This document shows positions 10,326-27,700 of a stretch of DNA of 64,000 nt, piece after piece; positions within the stretch are counted from its first letter, which is position 1, and every line of letters begins with the position of its first letter. The notes beneath the pieces are model-generated. The model was given only the letters and a program-made list of their open reading frames with translations. It made no database searches and was not told the DNA's origin. The stretch is taken from positions 50,051 through 114,050 of the forward strand of contig NIVC01002330.1 of the NCBI GenBank assembly GCA_002269645.1, read 5' to 3'. The DNA is from Macrostomum lignano (lineage: Eukaryota). Made by a program: the position numbers and the translations under genes.

Positions 10326-11098
10326 GGATGCTTGCTATTTGGGGATGCTATCTATCTTGGGGATGCTTGCTATCTGGGGGATGCTTGCTATCTGGGGGAT
10401 GCTTGCTATCTGGGGGATGCTTGCTATCTGGGGGATGCTTGCTATCTGGGGGATGCTTGCTATCTGGGGATGCTTGCTATCTGGGGGATGCTTGCTATCT
10501 GGGGGATGCTTGCTATCTGGGGGATGCTTGCTATCTGGGGGATGCTTGCTATCTGGGGGATGCTTGCTATCTTGGGGATGCTTGCTATCTTGGGGATGCT
10601 TGCTATCTGGGGGATGCTTGCTATCTGGGGGATGCTTGCTATCTGGGGGATGCTTGCTATCTGGGGGATGCTTGCTATCTGGGGGATGCTTGCTATCTGG
10701 GGGATGCTTGCTATCTGGGGGATGCTTGCTATCTGGGGGATGCTTGCTATCTGGACGATGCTTGCTATCTGGGGGATGCTTGCTATCTGGGGGATGCTTG
10801 CTATCTGGGGGATGCTTGCTATCTGGGGGATGCTTGCTATCTGGGGGATGCTTGCTATCTGGGGGATGCTTGCTATCTGGGGGATGCTTGCTATCTGAGG
10901 GATGCTTGCTATCTTGGGGATGCTTGCTATCTGGGGGATGCTTGCAATCTGGGGGATGCTTGCTATCTGGGGGATGCTTGCTATCTGGGGGATGCTTGCT
11001 ATCTAGGGGATGCTTGCTATCTGGGGGATGCTTGCTATCTAGGGGATGCTTGCTATCTAGGGGATGCTTGCTATCTGGGGGATGCTTGCAGTCTTGGG
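10326..11098. repeat. 18-bp minisatellite (GGGGGATGCTTGCTATCT) inside Helitron copy 1
   Basis: About 43 near-identical units. Confidence 0.95.
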
Positions 11099-11811
11099 AT
11101 GATTTCTTTTTGCAATGCACTTCATTTGAGCAGTTTGTCTGTTGTCTTTTTGAAGGATTTTTGGCTGTCTTTTTGTTACTTGTAGAAAACAGAGATTCTA
11201 TCCAGATGTCCCCCATCGTCTTATATACTAAATCTCTAATCTATGTCTGTCTGTCCGTGTAAAACGCTCTACAGACTGCAATTCTTGACCAATTTTGATT
11301 GCGTTTTCACCAAAAAGTTGCAACTCAACCAAGGATTGTATGGTTAACATTTCTTTTATCTGCTTCAATTCTAAAGGTCTTAAATATTCAAAAAACTGTA
11401 TTTTCCCTATCTAATTAGTGTATTTTTCTCGCAGTGAGAGCTCGAAAAATAATAATACGTCTATGGCCATAGACTAAACTTTAACTTCTTGAGCTGATGC
11501 TACGAGCTATAAATAATTAAATTATTCGCAAGCTTCAGAGTATGCACGTGGGAGATAAAAATATATTAAATTAATTTTCATTTATTTTTAGCTTGTGCCT
11601 GGACTAATCGAACATTTTTTGATTAAAAGCAACTACTAGCAATTTAAGCCCCCCGTTGGGGGACGCAAGAATGACGCCAAGTGGTTTTTATTTTGGCCAA
11701 TGAGTAATAACCTTACTTATTATTCAAAATCCATTAATCAAAACTTACTTTTTCTCATTTTTGGCAAAAATAAATTGCCATGAATCAAAACCTTCACCAG
11801 CCAAAGGCTAA

Positions 11812-13520: not shown

Positions 13521-16500
13521 TCTCTAAACTAAGAATCCTAATCTCTAAACTATGAATCCAAATCTCTAAACTAAGAATCCTAATCTCAAACTTAAGAATC
13601 CTAATCTCTAAACTAAGAATCCTAATCTCTAAACTAAGAATCCTAATCGCTGAACTAAGAATCCTAATCTCTAAACTAAGAATCCTAATCTCTAAACTAA
13701 GAATCCTAATCGCTGAACTAAGAATCCCAATCTCTAAACTAAGAATCCTAATCTCTAAACTAAGAATCAAAATCTCTAAACTAAGAATCCTAATCTCTAA
13801 ACTAAGAATCCTAATCTCTAAACTAAGAATCCTAATCTCTAAACTAAGAATCCTAATCTCTAAACTAAGAATTCTAATCTCTAAACTAAGAATCCTAATC
13901 TCTAAACTAAGAATCCAAATCTCTAAACTAAGAATCCTAATCTCTAAACTAAGAATCCTAATCTCTAAACTAAGAATCCTAATCTCTAAACTATGAGTCC
14001 AAATCGCTAAACTAAGAATCCAAATCTCAAACTTAAGAATCCTAATCTCTAAACTAAGAATCCAAATCGCTAAACTAAGAATCCAAATCGCTAAACTAAG
14101 AATCCTAATCTCTAAACTAAGAATCCTAATCTCTAAACTATGAATCAAAATCTCTAAACTAAGAATCCTAATCTCTAAACTAAGAATCCTAATCTCTAAA
14201 CTAAGAATCCAAATCTCTAAACTATGAATCAAAATCTCTAAACTAAGAATCCTAATCTCTAAACTAAGAATCCTAATCTCTAAACTAAGAATCCAAATCG
14301 CTAAACTAAGAATTCAAATCTCAAACTTAAGAATCCTAATCTCTAAACTAAGAATCCTAATCTCTAAACTATGAATCAAAATCTCTAAACTAAGAATCCA
14401 AATCTCAAACTTAAGAATCCTAATCTCTAAACTAAGAATCCTAATCGCTGAACTAAGAATCCTAATCTCTAAACTAAGAATCCTAATCTCTAAACTAAGA
14501 ATCCTAATCTCTAAACTAAGAATCCTAATCTCTAAACTAAGAATCCTAATCGCTAAACTAAGAATCCTAATCTCTAAACTAAGAATCCTAATCTCTAAAC
14601 TAAGAATCCTAATCTCTAAACTAAGAATCCTAATCGCTGAACTAAGAATCCTAATCTCTAAACTAAGAATCCTAATCTCTAAACTATGAATCCTAATCTC
14701 TAAACTAAGAATCCTAATCTCTAAACTATGAATCCAAATCGCTAAACTAAGAATCCAAATCTCAAACTTAAGAATCCTAATCTCTAAACTAAGAATCCTA
14801 ATCGCTAAACTAAGAATCAAAATCTCTAAACTAAGAATCCTAATCTCTAAACTAAGAATCCTAATCTCTAAACTAAGAATCCTAATCGCTGAACTAAGAA
14901 TCCCAATCTCTAAACTAAGAATCCTAATCTCTAAACTAAGAATCCTAATCGCTGAACTAAGAATCCTAATCTCTAAACTAAGAATCCTAATCTCTAAACT
15001 AAGAATCCTAATCTCTAAACTAAGAATCCTAATCGCTGAACTAAGAATCCAAATCTCAAACTTAAGAATCCTAATCTCTAAACTATGAATCCTAATCTCT
15101 AAACTAAGAATCCTAATCGCTGAACTAAGAATCCAAATCTCAAACTTAAGAATCCAAATCTCAAACTTAAGAATCCTAATCTCTAAACTAAGAATCCTAA
15201 TCTCTAAACTAAGAATCCTAATCGCTGAACTAAGAATCCTAATCTCTAAACTAAGAATCCTAATCTCTAAACTAAGAATCCAAATCTCTAAACTAAGAAT
15301 CCAAATCTCTAAACTATGAATCCTAATCTCTAAACTAAGAATCCTAATCGCTGAACTAAGAATCCTAATCTCTAAACTAAGAATCCTAATCTCTAAACTA
15401 TGAATCCTAATCTCTAAACTAAGAATCCTAATCTCTAAACTATGAATCCTAATCTCTAAACTATGAATCCTAATCGCTAAACTAAGAATCCAAATCTCTA
15501 AACTAAGAATCCAAATCTCTAAACTAAGAATCCTAATCTCTAAACTAAGAATCCAAATCTCTAAACTAAGAATCCAAATCTCTAAACTAAGAATCCAAAT
15601 CTCTAAACTAAGAATCCTAATCTCTAAACTAAGAATCCAAATCTCTAAACTATGAATCCAAATCTCTAAACTAAGAATCCAAATCTCTAAACTAAGAATC
15701 AAAATCGCTAAACTAAGAATCCAAATCTCTAAACTAAGAATCCAAATCTCTAAACTAAGAATCCTAATCTCTAAACTAAGAATCCTAATCGCTAAACTAA
15801 GAATCCAAATCTCTAAACTAAGAATCCAAATCTCTAAACTAAGAATCCAAATCTCTAAACTAAGAATCAAAATCGCTAAACTAAGAATCCAAATCTCTAA
15901 ACTAAGAATCCTAATCTCTAAACTAAGAATCCTAATCTCTAAACTATGAATCCTAATCGCTAAACTAAGAATCCAAATCTCTAAACTAAGAATCCAAATC
16001 TCTAAACTAAGAATCCAAATCTCTAAACTAAGAATCCTAATCGCTGAACTAAGAATCCTAATCTCTAAACTAAGAATCCTAATCTCTAAACTAAGAATCC
16101 TAATCTCTAAACTAAGAATCAAAATCGCTAAACTAAGAATCCAAATCTCTAAACTAAGAATCCTAATCTCTAAACTAAGAATCCTAATCTCTAAACTAAG
16201 AATCCTAATCTCAAACTTAAGAATCCTAATCTCTAAACTAAGAATCCTAATCTCTAAACTAAGAATCCTAATCTCTAAACTAAGAATCCTAATCTCTAAA
16301 CTAAGAATCAAAATCTCTAAACTAAGAATCCAAATCTCAAACTTAAGAATCCTAATCTCTAAACTAAGAATCCTAATCTCTAAACTAAGAATCCTAATCT
16401 CTAAACTAAGAATCCTAATCTCTAAACTAAGAATCCTAATCTCTAAACTAAGAATCCTAATCTCTAAACTAAGAATCCTAATCTCTAAACTAAGAATCCT

Positions 16501-16886
16501 AATCTCTAAACTATGAATCCAAATCGCTAAACTAAGAATCCAAATCTCAAACTTAAGAATCCTAATCTCTAAACTAAGAATCCTAATCTCTAAACTAAGA
16601 ATCCTAATCTCTAAACTAAGAATCCTAATCTCTAAACTAAGAATCCTAATCGCTGAACTAAGAATCCTAATCTCTAAACTAAGAATCCAAATCTCTAAAC
16701 TAAGAATCAAAATCGCTAAACTATGAATCCAAATCTCTAAACTATGAATCCAAATCTCTAAACTAAGAATCCAAATCTCTAAACTAAGAATCAAAATCGC
16801 TAAACTAAGAATCCAAATCTCTAAACTATGAATCCAAATCTCTAAACTAAGACTCCTAATCTCTAAACTAAGAATCAAAATCGCTA
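13521..16886. repeat. 21-bp satellite (CTAAGAATCCTAATCTCTAAA), main array
   Basis: About 160 tandem units with point variants; source of the spurious SLEIRIL ORFs. Confidence 0.97.
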
Positions 16887-17574: not shown

Positions 17575-18362
17575 TGTCAGTTGCTTGACCAGCCTCCCAG
17601 ATCCTTAGTTGCTAGGTCTTCCTTCACCCTCCAGATCCTCAGCTGCTGGGCCTTCCTTCACCCTCCCAGATCCCCAGTTGCTAGGTCTTCCTTCACCCTC
17701 CCAGATCCTCAGTTGATGGGTCTTCCTTCACCCTCCCAGATCCTCAGCTGCTGGGCCTTCCTTCACCCTCCCAGATCCCCAGTTGCTAGGTCTTCCTTCA
17801 CCCTCCCAGATCCTCAGTTGCTGGGTCTTCCTTCACCCTCCCAGATCCTCAGTTGCTAGGTCTTCCTTCACCCTCCCAGATCCTCAGTTGCTGGGTCTTC
17901 CTTCACCCTCCAAGATCCTCAGCTGCTGGGCCTTCCTTCACCCTCCCAGATCCCCAGTTGCTAGGTCTTCCTTCACCCTCCCAGATCCTCAGTTGATGGG
18001 TCTTCCTTCACCCTCCCAGATCCTCAGCTGCTGGGCCTTCCTTCACCCTCCCAGATCCCCAGTTGCTAGGTCTTCCTTCACCCTCCCAGATCCTCAGCTG
18101 CTGGGCCTTCCTTCACCCTCCCAGATCCCCAGTTGCTGGGCCAGCCTCCCAGATTCTCAATTGCTGGGCCAGCCTCCCAGATCCTCAATTGCTAGGCCAG
18201 CCTCCCAGATCCCCAGTTGCTGGGCCAGCCTCCCAGATCCCCAGTTGCTGGGCCAGCCTCCCAGATCCCCGGTTGCTGGACCAGTCTCCCAGATCCCCAG
18301 TTGCTTGGCCAGCCTCCCAGATCCTCAGTTGCTGGGCCAGCCTCTCAGATCCTCAGATGCTG
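17575..18362. repeat. 35-bp/28-bp compound minisatellite upstream of MED9
   Basis: Units CCAGATCCTCAGTTGCTGGGTCTTCCTTCACCCTC, then CCAGATCCCCAGTTGCTGGGCCAGCCTC. Confidence 0.93.
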
Positions 18363-18513
18363 GGCCACTCTCAGGCCTTCAGTTAAGGTGTTATTCAAGT
18401 AAGCCTTTAATTGTAATCCTGCCACCTAATGCTGCAATTATTAGGCATAATATTTGTCACGCACCGGAACTCATGAACCACTAGGCAGCAGTCCTGAGTC
18501 CCAGTAGCGTCTC

Positions 18514-18837
18514 ATGCATCACCAGCAGCAACCGCAGCAGCAGCACCGCCAGCATCAGGAAGCCGCCTCAGCCCCCATCCAGCAGGTGGATCTGGTATTC
18601 GGGCCGCTGATTCGCGACATATTCATTCACTACGCCAGCGATTCGCCCGGCACTACGGGAAAAATCCAGGAGCTTCGGCAAAAACTCGAGACAGCCAGAC
18701 AGCAGATTGAGCAGGCCGAGGGTATCGACCTGGACTCTGAGACGCAGCGGAGTCTGCTGGACTGTCTGGTGCACAAGCACAAGGAGAAGAGCGACTTGCT
18801 GGCCCGCCTGCGGCAGTGGCATGAGCCTAATGAGTGA
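18514..18837 (+). CDS. MED9: Mediator of RNA polymerase II transcription subunit 9 (107 aa, intronless)
   Basis: FGPLIRDIFIHYASDSP...IQELRQKLETARQQIEQAEGIDLDSETQRSLLDCLVHKHKEKSDLLARLR follows the Med9 pattern (F-x-P-L-[IV]..., PGI-x-x-S-x-E-x-Q..., K-x-x-LL-x-K). An in-frame TAG at 18505-18507 fixes the start unless spliced. Confidence 0.8.
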   Translation: MHHQQQPQQQHRQHQEAASAPIQQVDLVFGPLIRDIFIHYASDSPGTTGKIQELRQKLETARQQIEQAEGIDLDSETQRSLLDCLVHKHKEKSDLLARLRQWHEPNE

Positions 18838-19399
18838 ATCTGTTTCCGGTGTCAATTCCGGTGCCCCATGTGTCTACACCGGTCCCTGTGAAGAAGCCAG
18901 CAGTGCTGAATGCGCCAGCTTCATGTCGCAGCTGTACCAGCTTCAACGAGTGTCCTGCGCCGACGGTCGCCAGTTCACGGGTTGGCTGTACACGGTGGAC
19001 CCGGTCAGCCGGACCCGGGTGCTGGTTGACCTGGATGACCGGCAAGTGCACTTCCTACTGGCTGGAGCCACTGTCGAAGTCTCTCCGGTGCCGGGCGCTC
19101 AGCCGGCAACTGAGCAGCAGCGGATCGACATCGACAAGCTGGCTGTCGGGTGCGGCGCCGACGGCGAAGAACTCGACGACTCCGCTGTGGGATCGGCGAC
19201 AATCCAACGCCGCGACCAGGTGCGGGCCTGGTTTGCCAAGCACCGCATCGACTTGGCCGTGGGTGGCGAGGACTCGCTCAGCCTGACTCTAGGCGACAGT
19301 CTCACTATTAGGCCGCCCTACCTTGGCCGCACCTGCTATTGCAATAATGAGATTGTACTGGCCAGGTGTACTGCGCTGCTAGCCTTATTGCCGCCGTAG
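18821..19399 (+). CDS. GEMIN6: Gem-associated protein 6 (SMN complex, Sm-like fold); starts at ATG 18821 or 18830 and overlaps the MED9 stop
   Basis: FTGWLYTVDPVSRTRVLV, VRAWFAKHRI and LTIRPPY...CYCNNEIVLARC match the conserved Gemin6 blocks (GWVLTTDPVSANIVLV, LKKWLEKNHI, LTIDPPY...CSSSNEIILSRV). The supplied ORF start at 18707 is a TTG. AATAAA at about 19539. Confidence 0.88.
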   Translation: MSLMSESVSGVNSGAPCVYTGPCEEASSAECASFMSQLYQLQRVSCADGRQFTGWLYTVDPVSRTRVLVDLDDRQVHFLLAGATVEVSPVPGAQPATEQQRIDIDKLAVGCGADGEELDDSAVGSATIQRRDQVRAWFAKHRIDLAVGGEDSLSLTLGDSLTIRPPYLGRTCYCNNEIVLARCTALLALLPP

Positions 19400-19774
19400 T
19401 ATCCGCTTTAGTTGCAAACTCCTAGCTAATGCTGCATGTTTTTCTAACTGTAAAACATCCTTCTTCTCTACTCACAGTAGCGGATTTGGCACTACTACCG
19501 TCTAAACTATTTGCATTAATTGCTTGCGTTTGTTCTATAAATAAATACATTGCCTTGTCTCTGCTTTCTCTATTCAATGACTTAGTGAAGCTTTTAATGA
19601 AGACTTTCTACCAGTATAATTTTGCTTGCACTTTGTTTTTCCCAATCTTGACTTAGGTGCGGAAACAGGCGTGGGAAAGCAGTAAGTCGGCTGCTGTAAT
19701 TTTCATAATGTTTAGTCACGATGTGAGACCAATGAACGGAATCAGTGTAACGTGTGTACTATTTTACCGGTCAC

Positions 19775-20605
19775 TGTGTACACCAACCCGAGCTGTCACT
19801 GTGTGTACACCAACCCCAGCTGTCAGTGTGTACAACAGCCCCAGCTGTCAGTGTGTACACCAACACCAGCTGTCAGTGTGTACACCAACCCCAGCTGTCA
19901 GTGTGTACACCAACACCAGCTGTCAGTGTGTACACCAACCCCAGCTGTCAGTGTGTACACCAACACCAGCTGTCAGTGTGTACACCAACCCCAGCTGTCA
20001 CTGTGTACACCAACCCTAGCTGTCAGTGTGTACACTGGCTGTCACTGTACACCAACCCCAGCTGTCACTGTGTACACCAACCCCAGCTGTCAGTGTGTAC
20101 ACTGGCTGTCACTGTACACCAACCCCAGCTGTCAGTGTGTACACCAACCCCAGCTGTCAGTGTGTACACCAATCCCAGCTGTCACTGTGTACACCAATCC
20201 CAGCTGTCACTGTGTACACCAACCCCAGCTGTCAGTGTGTACACCAACACCAGCTGTCAGTGTGTACACCAACCCCAGCTGTCACTGTGTACACCAACCC
20301 TAGCTGTCAGTGTGTACACTGGCTGTCACTGTACACCAACCCCAGCTGTCACTGTGTACACCAACCCCAGCTGACACTGTGTACACCAACCCCAGCTGTC
20401 ACTGTGTACACCAACCCCAGCTGACACTGTGTACACCAACCCCAGCTGTCACTGTGTACACCAACCCCAGCTGACACTGTGTACACCAACCCCAGCTGTC
20501 ACTGTGTACACCAACCCCAGCTGACACTGTGTACACCAACCCCAGCTGTCACTGTGTACACCAATCCCAGCTGTCATTGTGTACACTGGCTGTCACTGTG
20601 TACAC
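19775..20605. repeat. About 25-bp minisatellite (GTGTACACCAACCCCAGCTGTCA[G/C]T)
   Basis: About 33 tandem units. Confidence 0.95.
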
Positions 20606-25880: not shown

Positions 25881-26319
25881 ACAGAAGTAGCTAGCTAGCT
25901 GAGAGCAAACTCGCGAGCACGCAAGCTTCGAGAAATAAACATTTTAAAGAGTGACTGCCACTTGCTAGCAGATGTAAGAAAAAAGAATATGCGTAAGCAC
26001 TAACAAGTAGAATTAATTTACATAAATTGAGTTCATTGCCAGTAAAAACTGACAACATCTTCACTGCATTATAGTGCACACCGTGCTATCCTCATTCGCT
26101 TTGCTCATTTCAGTTTCATGAGACGCATATTCGTACTCTTAGCCTTAACTCAGCGGTAAACAGCCTGCCCCATTCGGCGTTCAACTCTTTGCAATTATTT
26201 GCAATTTTAGCAAGCCATTATTGCAATTTGAGTCCCCTCAAGTCCTTGCAGCATGCGCCTATTTATGTCCCTTACACTGCCTGCGTCAGCGCAATTCCAT
26301 GGTCCTTGCGTTTTTATCT

Positions 26320-27700
26320 TCTCTTTTCTCATCTCCTCTCCTCCTCTTTTCTTATCTCCTTTCATCTATCTCTTCTCCTTTTTTACTTTCTTCTCCTCTC
26401 TTCTCAACCTTATCCTCTCCTATAATCTTTTCTTATCTCTGCCTTGCTCCTCTCCTCTCCTCTTCTCTCCTCTCCTCTTCTCTCCTTTCCTCACCTCTCC
26501 TCTCCACTTCTCTCCTCTCCACTACTCTCCTCTTTTCTCATATCCTCTCCTCTTCTTTCCTCTCCACTTCTTTCCTCTTCACTCCTTTCCTCTCCACTTC
26601 TCTCCTCTCCACTCCTCTTCCCTCCACTCCTTTCCTCTCCACTCCTTTCCTCTCCACTCATTTCCTCTCCACTCCTTTCCTCTCCACTTCTTTCCTCTCC
26701 ACTTCTTTCCTCTCCACTCCTTTCCTCTCCACTTCTTTCCTCTCCACTCCTTTCCTCTCCACTCCTTTCCTCTCCACTTCTTTCCTCTCCACTTCTTTCC
26801 TCTCCACTTCTTTCCTCTCCACTCCTTTCCTCTCCACTTCTTTCCTCTCCACTCCTTTCCTCTCCTCTTCTTTCCTCTCCACTTCTTTCCTCTTCACTCC
26901 TTTCCTCTCCACTCCTCTTCCCTCCACTTCTTTCCTCTCCACTTCTTTCCTCTCCACTCCTTTCCTCTCCACTCCTTTCCTCTTCACTCCTTTCCTCTCC
27001 ACTTCTTTCCTCTCCACTCCTTTCCTCTCCACTTCTTTCCTCTCCACTCCTTTCCTCTTCACTCCTTTCCTCTCCACTTCTTTCCTCTCCACTCCTTTCC
27101 TCTCCACTCCTTTCCTCTCCACTCCTCTTCCCTTCACTCCTTTCCTCTCCACTTCTTTCCTCTCCACTTCTTTCCTCTCCACTCCTTTCCTCTCCACTCC
27201 TCTTCCCTCCACTTCTTTCCTCTCCACTTCTTTCCTCTCCACTCCTCTTCCCTTCACTTCTTTCCTCTCCACTTCTTTCCTCTCCACTCCTTTCCTCTCC
27301 ACTCCTTTCCTCTCCACTCCTTTCCTCTCCACTTCTTTCCTCTCCACTTCTTTCCTCTCCACTTCTTTCCTCTCCACTTCTTTCCTCTCCACTTCTTTCC
27401 TCTCCACTTCTTTCCTCTCCACTCCTTTCCTCTCCACTTCTTTCCTCTCCACTCCTTTCCTCTCCACTTCTTTCCTCTCCACTTCTTTCCTCTTCACTCC
27501 TTTCCTCTCCACTCCTCTTCCCTCCACTTCTTTCCTCTCCACTTCTTTCCTCTCCACTTCTTTCCTCTCCACTTCTTTCCTCTCCACTTCTTTCCTCTTC
27601 ACTCCTTTCCTCTCCACTCCTCTTCCCTCCACTCCACTCCTCTCATTTTTTCTTATCTCTGCTCCGCTTTCTCTTCTCTTCTCATCTAGTCATCTCATCT
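26320..27700. repeat. Polypyrimidine tract with a 15-bp unit (CTCTCCAC[T]TC[T/C]TTTC-type)
   Basis: About 1.4 kb, almost only C/T, with one A per unit. Confidence 0.97.

What the first reader, a model, noticed from the sequence alone, without database searches (positions are those of the whole stretch)
18514..19399. Overlapping MED9 and GEMIN6 ORFs: candidate bicistronic mRNA with leaky scanning or stop-start coupling
Two unrelated, conserved housekeeping genes (a Mediator subunit and an SMN-complex subunit) are intronless, on the same strand, in different frames, and overlap: ...GGC ATG AGC CTA ATG AGT GA..., where the MED9 stop TGA (18835-18837) lies inside the GEMIN6 start region (overlap 17 nt from ATG 18821, or 8 nt ATGAGTGA from ATG 18830). 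There is no room for a poly(A) site or promoter between them, and the first AATAAA follows GEMIN6 (about 19539). The MED9 AUG context is weak (CTCATGC, C at -3 and +4). There is no ATG in any frame in the 304 nt between 18516 and 18821, whereas several would be expected by chance, and ATG 18821 has G at -3. This is the signature of leaky scanning; the stop-start geometry also permits termination-reinitiation. It would couple Mediator and snRNP-assembly subunit output from one eukaryotic mRNA.
Basis: partly seen in the sequence, partly recalled or inferred. Interest (0 to 1): 0.88.

Follow-up and report, generated by a model that had tools for sequence, protein, structure and literature searches.

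The report
Conserved two-gene MED9–GEMIN6 transcription unit
In the flatworm Macrostomum lignano the genes for a Mediator subunit (MED9) and an snRNP-assembly factor (Gemin6) sit end to end with touching or overlapping reading frames, and the same head-to-tail pair is found in molluscs and an annelid, so this looks like an ancient two-protein gene whose second protein needs non-standard expression.

Summary
The anatomy is real. The window is M. lignano contig NIVC01002330.1. ORF 18514-18837 is MED9 and ORF 18821-19399 is Gemin6: same strand, different frames, no introns. The only AATAAA lies at 19540, and three genomic copies are identical across the junction.

Two points are weaker than claimed. 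The 304-nt ATG-free stretch is what this protein and its codon usage predict. The overlap also depends on using ATG 18821 or 18830, because homology starts only at M35 (ATG 18923).

MED9→Gemin6 adjacency is not peculiar to this worm. It occurs in Pecten, Pomacea, Paralvinella (UGAUG stop-start) and nine anonymous contigs representing at most eight further taxa, with gaps from -1 to 718 nt. One contig looks like a spliced RNA carrying both ORFs. Four outgroups lack the linkage and share a Gemin6 intron that the linked copies lack, which suggests a retrogene origin.

M. lignano alone has a weak MED9 AUG context (C at -3 and +4); five relatives have a purine at -3.

Best reading: one inherited dicistronic unit, with Gemin6 read by leaky scanning and possibly reinitiation. 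SL trans-splicing or an internal start site giving a separate Gemin6 mRNA is not excluded, and no M. lignano transcript data could be reached.

The parts
18377..18382 (+). CTTCAG, the only match to the M. lignano SL trans-splice acceptor motif [T/C]TNCAG between 18380 and 18930. It lies upstream of MED9 at the end of the tandem array and is a possible 5' processing site for the whole unit. This is speculative.
   Evidence: scan of all AG sites; motif from PMC8629364.
18380..18513 (+). AT-rich 5' flank or leader (GC 0.33-0.35 up to 18460). It holds ATGs at 18429 and 18473 that open short ORFs ending before the MED9 AUG. The true 5' end of the transcript is unknown.
18514..18837 (+). MED9 ORF, 107 aa, intronless, no internal Met. 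Its start AUG is in a weak context (C at -3, C at +4).
18821..18837 (+). Overlap of the MED9 tail (WHEPNE*) with the first codons of the Gemin6 ORF (MSLMSE). ATG 18821 and ATG 18830 lie 14 and 5 nt upstream of the UGA. No stable RNA structure is predicted here (z = +1.5).
18821..19399 (+). Gemin6 ORF, 192 aa as annotated in GenBank (Sm-like domain plus Gemin6_C). Alternative in-frame starts are at 18830 and 18923.
18838..18922 (+). Weakly constrained stretch, either a non-conserved Gemin6 N-terminal tail or an 85-nt spacer. It contains a 12-nt unit (CCGGTGNNANTN) whose copy number varies between paralogues. It holds 4 of the 8 differences from copy L001. Out-of-frame ATGs lie at 18868 and 18910.
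19540..19545 (+). The only AATAAA in the unit, 141 nt after the Gemin6 stop. It is the likely shared poly(A) signal.

Best explanation
MED9 and Gemin6 form a single transcription unit inherited from an early lophotrochozoan ancestor.

Origin (inferred). A processed, intron-less Gemin6 copy landed directly behind the last MED9 exon, and the two genes have stayed head to tail ever since.

In M. lignano (what the sequence shows). MED9 has also lost its intron. The spacer has collapsed so that the open frames touch or overlap. The unit has one poly(A) signal, after Gemin6.

Translation (inferred). MED9 is read from the first AUG, which is in a weak context. A fraction of scanning 40S subunits pass it, meet no other AUG for 304 nt, and start Gemin6 at AUG 18821 (G at -3), which is in the Gemin6 frame. 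This is leaky scanning. Ribosomes terminating at UGA 18835-18837 could also restart at the AUGs 5 or 14 nt upstream, as a secondary route.

Shown: gene identities, geometry, absence of poly(A) signals between the ORFs, conservation of the gene pair, and the derived weak AUG context. Inferred: that one mature mRNA carries both ORFs in M. lignano, and that Gemin6 is translated from it.
For: One unit:
- GC content is a continuous 0.6-0.7 from 18460 to 19400, with AT-rich flanks.
- No AATAAA or common variant lies before 19540.
- The junction is identical in three genomic copies.

Conservation. MED9 lies immediately upstream of Gemin6 on the same strand in:
- Pecten maximus, gap 170 nt;
- Pomacea canaliculata, 304 nt;
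- Paralvinella palmiformis, where TGA and ATG overlap as UGAUG;
- nine anonymous contigs (two of them, L021 and L022, near-identical), with gaps of 31, 32, 40, 56, 85, 230, 255 and 718 nt.

Seven of 13 loci have gaps of 85 nt or less.

Spliced RNA. Contig L023 has the MED9 ORF joined exactly at an intron position that is present in ten genomic loci, followed 56 nt later by Gemin6.

Outgroups. Nasonia, Centruroides, Branchiostoma and Ptychodera lack the linkage. They share one Gemin6 intron after the DPVS motif that the MED9-linked copies lack.

Leaky scanning in M. lignano:
- MED9 AUG has C at -3 and C at +4, against a purine at -3 in 5 of 5 other loci.
- There is no AUG up to 18821.
- The first two downstream AUGs are both in the Gemin6 frame, and the first has G at -3.

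Against standard operon processing. No [T/C]TNCAG acceptor lies between 18500 and 18920. The overlap would prevent both complete mRNAs from coming from one precursor.
Against: - No M. lignano transcript, SL-read, 5'-end or poly(A)-read data could be examined.
[quoted passage not shown] A weak acceptor such as CGGCAG at 18811-18816 cannot be excluded.
- The ATG-free run is not statistically unusual.
- Relatives have strong MED9 AUG contexts, and L023 has 5 intervening AUGs. Leaky scanning therefore cannot be the ancestral mechanism.
- Pomacea has two AATAAA in its spacer, so in some lineages the genes may be separately transcribed.
- The Gemin6 N-terminal 34 codons lack support from homology and codon usage.
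- MED9 is absent from the GenBank protein set. This fits one CDS being called per transcript, but it is also compatible with a cut transcript.
Confidence: 0.5

Rival explanations
1. There is a separate Gemin6 mRNA. The unit is transcribed as one precursor, but Gemin6 is expressed from a shorter RNA. That RNA is made either by SL trans-splicing at a weak acceptor inside or just after the MED9 3' end (for example CGGCAG|TGGC at 18816/18817, or GCCAG|CTTC at 18918/18919), or from an internal transcription start within the MED9 coding sequence. The full-length RNA would then serve only MED9.
For: - SL trans-splicing affects 30% of all genes and 45% of conserved genes in M. lignano.
- Operon gaps peak near 100 nt, and 56% of acceptors lack the consensus motif (PMC8629364).
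- If ATG 18923 is the start, the 85-nt gap resembles an operon spacer.
- Many AG dinucleotides are available.
- Pomacea has poly(A) signals in its spacer, so separate mRNAs exist or are possible in some relatives.
Against: - No [T/C]TNCAG acceptor and no pyrimidine-rich tract lie between the ORFs.
- No poly(A) signal for MED9 exists.
- Splicing upstream of 18821 would destroy the MED9 ORF of that molecule.
- For every acceptor between 18838 and 18923, the AUG that ends the SL would be out of frame with Gemin6.
- The same tight pair exists in an annelid and in molluscs. To my knowledge SL trans-splicing has not been described in those phyla.
Confidence: 0.3
2. Termination-reinitiation is the main route. 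Ribosomes that finish MED9 at UGA 18835-18837 stay on the mRNA and restart at AUG 18830 or 18821 just upstream. Calicivirus VP2 and influenza B BM2 are expressed this way.
For: - The stop-start geometry AUGAGUGA matches the 8-nt form AUGUCUGA, the string found once in the RHDV paper PMC6393290; that it is the RHDV VP1/VP2 stop-start site is from memory.
- Paralvinella has UGAUG, like influenza B UAAUG (abstract of PMC3035654).
- Short gaps of 31-56 nt in four other loci suit restart after termination.
- L023 has intervening AUGs that rule out leaky scanning in that species.
- The junction is unstructured.
Against: - The TURBS motif 1 pentamer UGGGA is absent from the 100 nt upstream of the stop in M. 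lignano and six related loci.
- From general knowledge, restart after an ORF of about 100 codons is normally inefficient without such an element.
- The gap is not conserved; it ranges from -17 to 718 nt.
Confidence: 0.12
3. There is no true overlap. Gemin6 starts at ATG 18923 (M35), and 18838-18922 is an 85-nt non-coding spacer, as in related species. This concerns anatomy only and is compatible with any of the expression routes above.
For: - Homology to 124 relatives begins at residues 32-37.
- The stretch fits local codon usage worst in the Gemin6 frame (-7.6 bits), and its GC by codon position is 0.54/0.68/0.50 against 0.69/0.47/0.74 in the core.
- It is the most variable part between paralogues and contains a 12-nt unit of variable copy number.
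- An 85-nt gap equals that of locus L004.
Against: - Any scanning ribosome meets ATG 18821 and 18830 first. Both are in frame with Gemin6 with no stop in between.
- Out-of-frame ATGs at 18868 and 18910 would interfere with a start at 18923.
- Relatives carry 10-35 residues N-terminal to the conserved core.
- The paralogue's indel keeps the frame.
- GenBank annotates the 192-aa form.
Confidence: 0.2

Closest known systems
Animal dicistronic genes with overlapping ORFs, such as MOCS2 (MOCS2A/MOCS2B), and the many annotated Drosophila dicistronic genes (from my own knowledge, not checked here)
   Same: Two complete proteins are encoded on one strand of one locus, in different frames, with a short overlap and a single poly(A) signal. 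Leaky scanning or reinitiation is invoked for the second ORF.
   Different: In MOCS2 the two proteins are subunits of one enzyme. MED9 and Gemin6 have no known functional link. The MED9-Gemin6 pairing did not appear in the literature searches made here.
SL trans-spliced operons of M. lignano and other flatworms (PMC8629364)
   Same: Same-strand, tightly packed conserved genes in an organism that resolves polycistronic precursors with a 35-nt spliced leader ending in AUG.
   Different: - Operon gaps peak near 100 nt and need a poly(A) site for the upstream gene and an acceptor for the downstream one. Here the frames overlap (or are 85 nt apart), with no poly(A) signal and no consensus acceptor.
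- The gene pair also exists in molluscs and an annelid.
Viral termination-reinitiation (calicivirus TURBS; influenza B M1/BM2 UAAUG; PMC6393290, PMC3035654)
   Same: Stop and start codons overlap or lie within a few nucleotides: AUGAGUGA here and UGAUG in Paralvinella.
   Different: No UGGGA motif complementary to 18S rRNA lies upstream. These are cellular housekeeping genes. The gap varies widely between species.
Polycistronic mRNAs of green algae read by leaky scanning (from my own knowledge, not checked here)
   Same: A weak start context on the first ORF, few AUGs within it, and unrelated proteins expressed from one capped mRNA.
   Different: A different kingdom. Here the AUG-poor state is not statistically distinguishable from chance.
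Drosophila MED9 (CG42517) / CG42518
   Same: A single P-element insertion is assigned to both genes (PMC4978919). From memory they are annotated as a dicistronic pair, so MED9 may share an mRNA with a second ORF in flies too.
   Different: CG42518 could not be compared with Gemin6 here. No Drosophila protein appeared among the Gemin6 profile hits, and Gemin6 is reported lost in Drosophila (PMC6385987). Nasonia MED9 and Gemin6 are not linked.

Membership tests
MED9 (Mediator subunit 9) | Match to the Med9 family model above its curated cut-off, covering the conserved C-terminal helices | tested here: met
   Pfam PF07544 at E = 3e-8, 34 bits against a cut-off of 26.9, profile positions 26-78 of 80. 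Human MED9 chain 7emf_I at E = 5e-4 over residues 6-100. A profile of lophotrochozoan MED9 last exons scores 91 bits.
Gemin6 | Sm-like N-terminal domain plus Gemin6 C-terminal domain; distinct from LSM12 | tested here: met
   - PF06372 scores 23.2 bits (cut-off 23.9) and PF20417 scores 31.2 bits (cut-off 33.4). Both are just below cut-off, and no LSM12 or AD family is listed.
- PDB Gemin6 chain 1y96_A at E = 0.006.
- 124 relatives found.
- The 98%-identical paralogous copy P0001 scores E = 2e-35 against a 41-sequence profile whose named hits are all gem-associated protein 6.
- All six invariant alignment columns are kept.
Dicistronic mRNA read by leaky scanning | Both ORFs present on one mature capped mRNA | not testable with these tools
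   No M. lignano transcript data were reachable. Indirect support comes from the absence of poly(A) signals between the ORFs and from spliced-looking contig L023 in a relative.
Dicistronic mRNA read by leaky scanning | Upstream AUG in a weak context and downstream AUG in a better one | tested here: met
   MED9 has C at -3 and C at +4. AUG 18821 has G at -3 and A at +4. Five of five orthologous MED9 AUGs have a purine at -3. The species' own consensus start context is unknown.
Dicistronic mRNA read by leaky scanning | No AUG between the two start codons, beyond chance expectation | tested here: inconclusive
   There are zero ATGs in 304 nt. However, the chance of that is 0.67-0.88 for out-of-frame ATGs given the protein and codon usage, and Met-free last exons occur in 4 of 10 orthologues.
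Termination-reinitiation (TURBS type) | Restart AUG overlapping or within a few nt of the upstream stop | tested here: met
   AUG 18830 and 18821 lie 5 and 14 nt upstream of UGA 18835.
Termination-reinitiation (TURBS type) | Motif 1 (UGGGA, complementary to 18S rRNA) about 40-80 nt upstream of the stop-start site | tested here: not met
   No TGGGA lies in the 100 nt upstream of the stop in M. lignano or six related loci. Motif as given in PMC6393290.
SL trans-spliced operon (M. lignano type) | Spacer of about 100 nt holding a poly(A) signal for the upstream gene | tested here: not met
   The ORFs overlap by 17 or 8 nt, or lie 85 nt apart if ATG 18923 is used. No AATAAA or variant lies between 18514 and 19343.
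SL trans-spliced operon (M. lignano type) | Trans-splice acceptor upstream of the downstream ORF | tested here: inconclusive
   No [T/C]TNCAG lies between 18500 and 18920, only generic AG sites. The motif is present at only 44% of known sites.
SL trans-spliced operon (M. lignano type) | SL-containing reads mapping at the 5' end of the downstream gene | not testable with these tools

The most novel reading that the evidence does not exclude
MED9-GEMIN6 is an ancient dicistronic gene of Lophotrochozoa, born when a Gemin6 retrocopy landed behind MED9. It has been kept for over 500 million years (my own estimate of the age of the three phyla, not from a tool result) in flatworms, annelids and molluscs. 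Gemin6 is translated from the MED9 mRNA by lineage-specific non-canonical routes: leaky scanning in Macrostomum, UGAUG stop-start reinitiation in Paralvinella, and restart after short spacers elsewhere. On this reading the output of a Mediator subunit and an SMN-complex subunit is hard-wired together.
Probability: 0.35. Interest if true: 0.8.

Novelty: new member of a known kind. Interest (0 to 1): 0.64.

Why it matters
Cellular mRNAs that make two unrelated full-length proteins are rare in animals, and few have known evolutionary depth. If the reading is right, there are four consequences.

- One housekeeping pair spans three phyla with a natural series of spacer lengths from -17 to 718 nt. 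That series is a ready-made comparative system for asking how downstream ORFs are translated without viral elements.
- M. lignano has transgenesis and existing 5'-end, SL-read and poly(A)-read data, so the mechanism is directly testable there.
- It shows how a retrogene can survive by riding on a host gene's transcript and then replace its parent.
- MED9 is missing from the deposited M. lignano protein set, probably because one CDS was kept per transcript. Other second cistrons may be hidden in the same way.

Tried and rejected
- Assembly indel at the junction: rejected, because three contigs agree.
- Frameshift or readthrough fusion protein: no support. The frame relation between MED9 and Gemin6 differs between species, and the overlap covers only non-conserved termini.
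- Structured RNA or a known RNA element at the junction: none. Folding gives z = +1.5, and the only Rfam match is a sub-threshold chance hit in the repeat array.
- TURBS motif: absent.
- ATG depletion as a signature: tested by synonymous shuffles and orthologue counts, and not significant.
- Selection analysis from M. lignano paralogues: impossible, with only 8 differences in 1.24 kb.
- M. lignano transcripts in Logan or other assemblies: the exact-protein look-ups returned only the GenBank genome contigs for Gemin6 and nothing for MED9.
- Gene identifiers or GEMIN6/MED9 entries in the supplements of PMC5816591 and PMC5730564, and in full text: none.
- Literature on a MED9-GEMIN6 or MED9 dicistronic gene: none found.
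- My recollection that Drosophila Gemin7 is bicistronic was not borne out by PMC6385987.
- The first related-loci scan, with the 41-sequence alignment, failed for lack of a conserved stretch. It was repeated with 14 closer sequences.
- Other long ORFs in the window are repeat-derived or low-complexity.
Full report
**Source and anatomy**

The window is Macrostomum lignano assembly GCA_002269645.1, contig NIVC01002330.1. Locus L003 is identical to window 8821-29399.

- ORF1 (18514-18837, 107 aa) starts right after an in-frame TAG.
- ORF2 is open from ATG 18821 (second ATG at 18830) to 19399 (192 aa), in the +1 frame.
- The frames overlap by 17 or 8 nt.
- ORF1 is MED9: Pfam Med9 above its cut-off, and human MED9 in PDB.
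- ORF2 is Gemin6, not LSM12. Both Gemin6 Pfam domains score just under cut-off. PDB Gemin6 matches, and there are 124 relatives.
- A 41-sequence Gemin6 profile gives E = 2e-35 for P0001, the 98%-identical paralogous copy of ORF2. Its named hits are all gem-associated protein 6.

GenBank annotates only the 192-aa Gemin6 here. The MED9 ORF is in no protein collection searched.

All coordinates are right. The only AATAAA between 18300 and 19800 is at 19540, and no common variant lies between the ORFs. GC content is a continuous 0.6-0.7 from 18460 to 19400, with AT-rich flanks. Three separately assembled copies are identical across the junction, so an assembly indel is unlikely.

The ATG-free 304 nt is real but not remarkable.
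- Composition predicts 3-4 ATGs.
- Given the protein and codon usage, zero out-of-frame ATGs has probability 0.67-0.88.
- Gemin6 itself contains a 309-nt ATG-free run.
- Several orthologous MED9 exons also lack Met.

The overlap depends on the start codon.
- Homology starts at residues 32-37.
- The stretch 18838-18922 fits local codon usage worst in the Gemin6 frame.
- That stretch holds 4 of the 8 differences from paralogue L001, including a copy-number change of a 12-nt unit.
- Against a start at 18923: a scanning ribosome meets 18821 and 18830 first, both in frame. ATGs at 18868 and 18910 are out of frame and would interfere.

**The organism matters**

M. lignano adds a 35-nt spliced leader ending in AUG to about 30% of its genes and 45% of its conserved genes. 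It has operons whose gaps peak near 100 nt. The acceptor motif [T/C]TNCAG is present at 44% of sites (PMC8629364; PMC5730564).

I scanned every AG from 18380 to 18930. The only motif match is CTTCAG at 18377-18382, upstream of MED9. None lies within or after the MED9 3' end. For every acceptor between the MED9 stop and ATG 18923, the SL's own AUG would be out of frame with Gemin6. Trans-splicing upstream of 18821 would also truncate MED9 on that molecule.

Standard operon processing therefore fits poorly. A weak acceptor or an internal transcription start cannot be excluded.

**Comparative result**

Using Gemin6 relatives from the protein searches, I fetched their genomic surroundings.

| Locus | Organism | Gap, MED9 stop to Gemin6 ATG |
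|---|---|---|
| window | M. lignano | -17 or -8 (+85 if ATG 18923) |
| L028 | Paralvinella palmiformis | -1 (UGAUG), or +11 from the annotated ATG |
| L021, L022 | anonymous | 31, 32 |
| L059 | anonymous | 40 |
| L023 | anonymous | 56 |
| L004 | anonymous | 85 |
| L005 | Pecten maximus | 170 |
| L020 | anonymous | 230 |
| L026 | anonymous | 255 |
| L010 | Pomacea canaliculata | 304 |
| L057 | anonymous | 718 |

- In all of these a Med9 gene or last exon lies immediately upstream of Gemin6 on the same strand. Most anonymous loci came from the related-loci scan and the searches that followed it.
- Pecten and Pomacea also share VPS35L on the opposite strand upstream.
- L028 is assigned to Paralvinella because its Gemin6 is 100% identical to the NCBI protein.
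- By sequence identity, L020 is pectinid-like and L026 is Mya-like.
- Seven of 13 loci have gaps of 85 nt or less, too short for a poly(A) site plus a promoter.
- The short spacers hold no or one ATG and no poly(A) signal. Pomacea, with the second-longest gap, has two AATAAA and seven ATGs in its spacer.

**A probable dicistronic transcript in a relative**

Ten genomic loci share a MED9 intron at the same codon, with donor ...AAAGAG|gtaagt and acceptor ...ttcag|TGTGGAG. Contig L023 (1104 nt) has the exons joined exactly there.

L023 has a 54-nt leader, a complete 88-aa MED9, a 56-nt spacer, a complete 195-aa Gemin6 and a 139-nt trailer. It is either a spliced RNA carrying both ORFs or an intron-less gene. 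I could not verify the sample type.

**Outgroups and origin**

In Nasonia, Centruroides, Branchiostoma and Ptychodera, no MED9 lies within 10 kb of Gemin6.
- Their Gemin6 genes share one intron after the DPVS motif (residues 54-60). All MED9-linked copies lack it.
- The introns seen in L026 and L057 are at other positions.
- Branchiostoma Gemin6 lies next to a DHX57-like helicase gene. From my own knowledge this matches the human arrangement.

I infer that a processed Gemin6 copy inserted behind MED9 in an early lophotrochozoan and replaced the parental gene.

About 30 contigs (L029-L058) have an intron-less Gemin6 without MED9 in the upstream sequence available, 2-5 kb in about a dozen of them, so the pair was broken in at least one lineage. 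From memory of the project identifiers they are probably gutless-oligochaete hosts; this is unverified.

**Mechanism in M. lignano**

Among six loci where the MED9 start is known, five have a purine at -3 and four have G at +4. M. lignano alone has C at both positions.

The absence of any AUG before 18821 and the G at -3 of that AUG give a coherent, derived leaky-scanning design. The first two downstream AUGs are also both in the Gemin6 frame. Each element alone is weak.

Reinitiation is geometrically possible. AUGAGUGA resembles the RHDV stop-start form AUGUCUGA (PMC6393290), and Paralvinella has UGAUG. However, no UGGGA motif is present in any of seven loci, the junction is unstructured, and no Rfam family matches.

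Relatives have strong MED9 AUG contexts and, in L023, five intervening AUGs. The ancestral route was therefore not leaky scanning.

**Verdict**

Its interpretation is plausible and is strengthened by conservation, but it is unproven for M. lignano.

| Reading | Weight |
|---|---|
| Both proteins translated from one mRNA, mainly by leaky scanning | about 0.5 |
| Reinitiation as the main route | about 0.12 |
| A separate Gemin6 mRNA (SL trans-splicing or internal start) | about 0.3 |
| Other readings | remainder |

Independently of these, there is a probability of about 0.2 that the true Gemin6 start is ATG 18923 and the ORFs do not overlap.

The literature searches found no report of a MED9-GEMIN6 unit. 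In kind it is a new member of the known class of animal dicistronic genes, notable for spanning three phyla.

Noticed in passing
window 17593-18367 and 19770-20586: The 1.4-kb MED9-Gemin6 island lies between two minisatellite arrays. Upstream are 35-nt and 28-nt units (about 16 and 9 copies). Downstream is a 25-nt unit (about 34 copies). They create many spurious long ORFs.
   Followed up: partly
window 18514-18837: MED9 of M. lignano appears to be missing from the deposited protein annotation. Neither the exact protein nor any homologue of it was found in the protein collections. Probably only the longer CDS of the transcript was kept.
   Followed up: partly
L001:10046-10057 (copy on NIVC01003533.1) versus window 18846: The GenBank model for this paralogue gives a 192-aa product from a 591-nt gene range, although the genomic ORF encodes 196 aa. 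The extra 12-nt repeat unit seems to have been skipped as a gap or mini-intron in the annotation.
   Followed up: partly
L028:852-868 (Paralvinella palmiformis, Ga0256913_10105054): The MED9 stop and a Gemin6-frame ATG overlap as UGAUG. The NCBI protein starts at the next ATG, 12 nt downstream. This is a textbook stop-start arrangement in a cellular annelid gene.
   Followed up: partly
L005:1-6256 and L012/L013 (Pomacea) upstream regions: VPS35L lies on the opposite strand just upstream of MED9 in both Pecten and Pomacea. The conserved block is therefore VPS35L(-)/MED9(+)/Gemin6(+) in molluscs. It was not seen within the M. lignano flanks examined.
   Followed up: no
L007:12810-21984 (Branchiostoma): Gemin6 lies next to a DHX57-like helicase gene (RWD, DEAD, HA2 and OB domains). 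From my own knowledge this is also the human neighbour, which suggests that it is the ancestral location of intron-containing Gemin6.
   Followed up: no
L029-L058 (JGI contigs Ga0056xxx and Ga0209xxx): About 30 contigs carry an intron-less Gemin6 with no MED9 in the available upstream flank (2-5 kb in about a dozen of them). This is a lineage in which the pair seems to have been separated. The organism was not established.
   Followed up: partly
Drosophila MED9 / CG42518 (literature): One P-element insertion is assigned to both MED9 and CG42518 (PMC4978919). From memory these form a dicistronic gene. Whether CG42518 is related to Gemin6 could not be tested.
   Followed up: no
window 10335-11213 (-), 26253-27686 (+), 14314-16875 (-): Long ORFs here give only low-complexity Pfam matches (histidine-rich, extensin-like) or none, and lie in regions of strongly skewed composition. 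They are probably translated repeats, not genes.
   Followed up: partly
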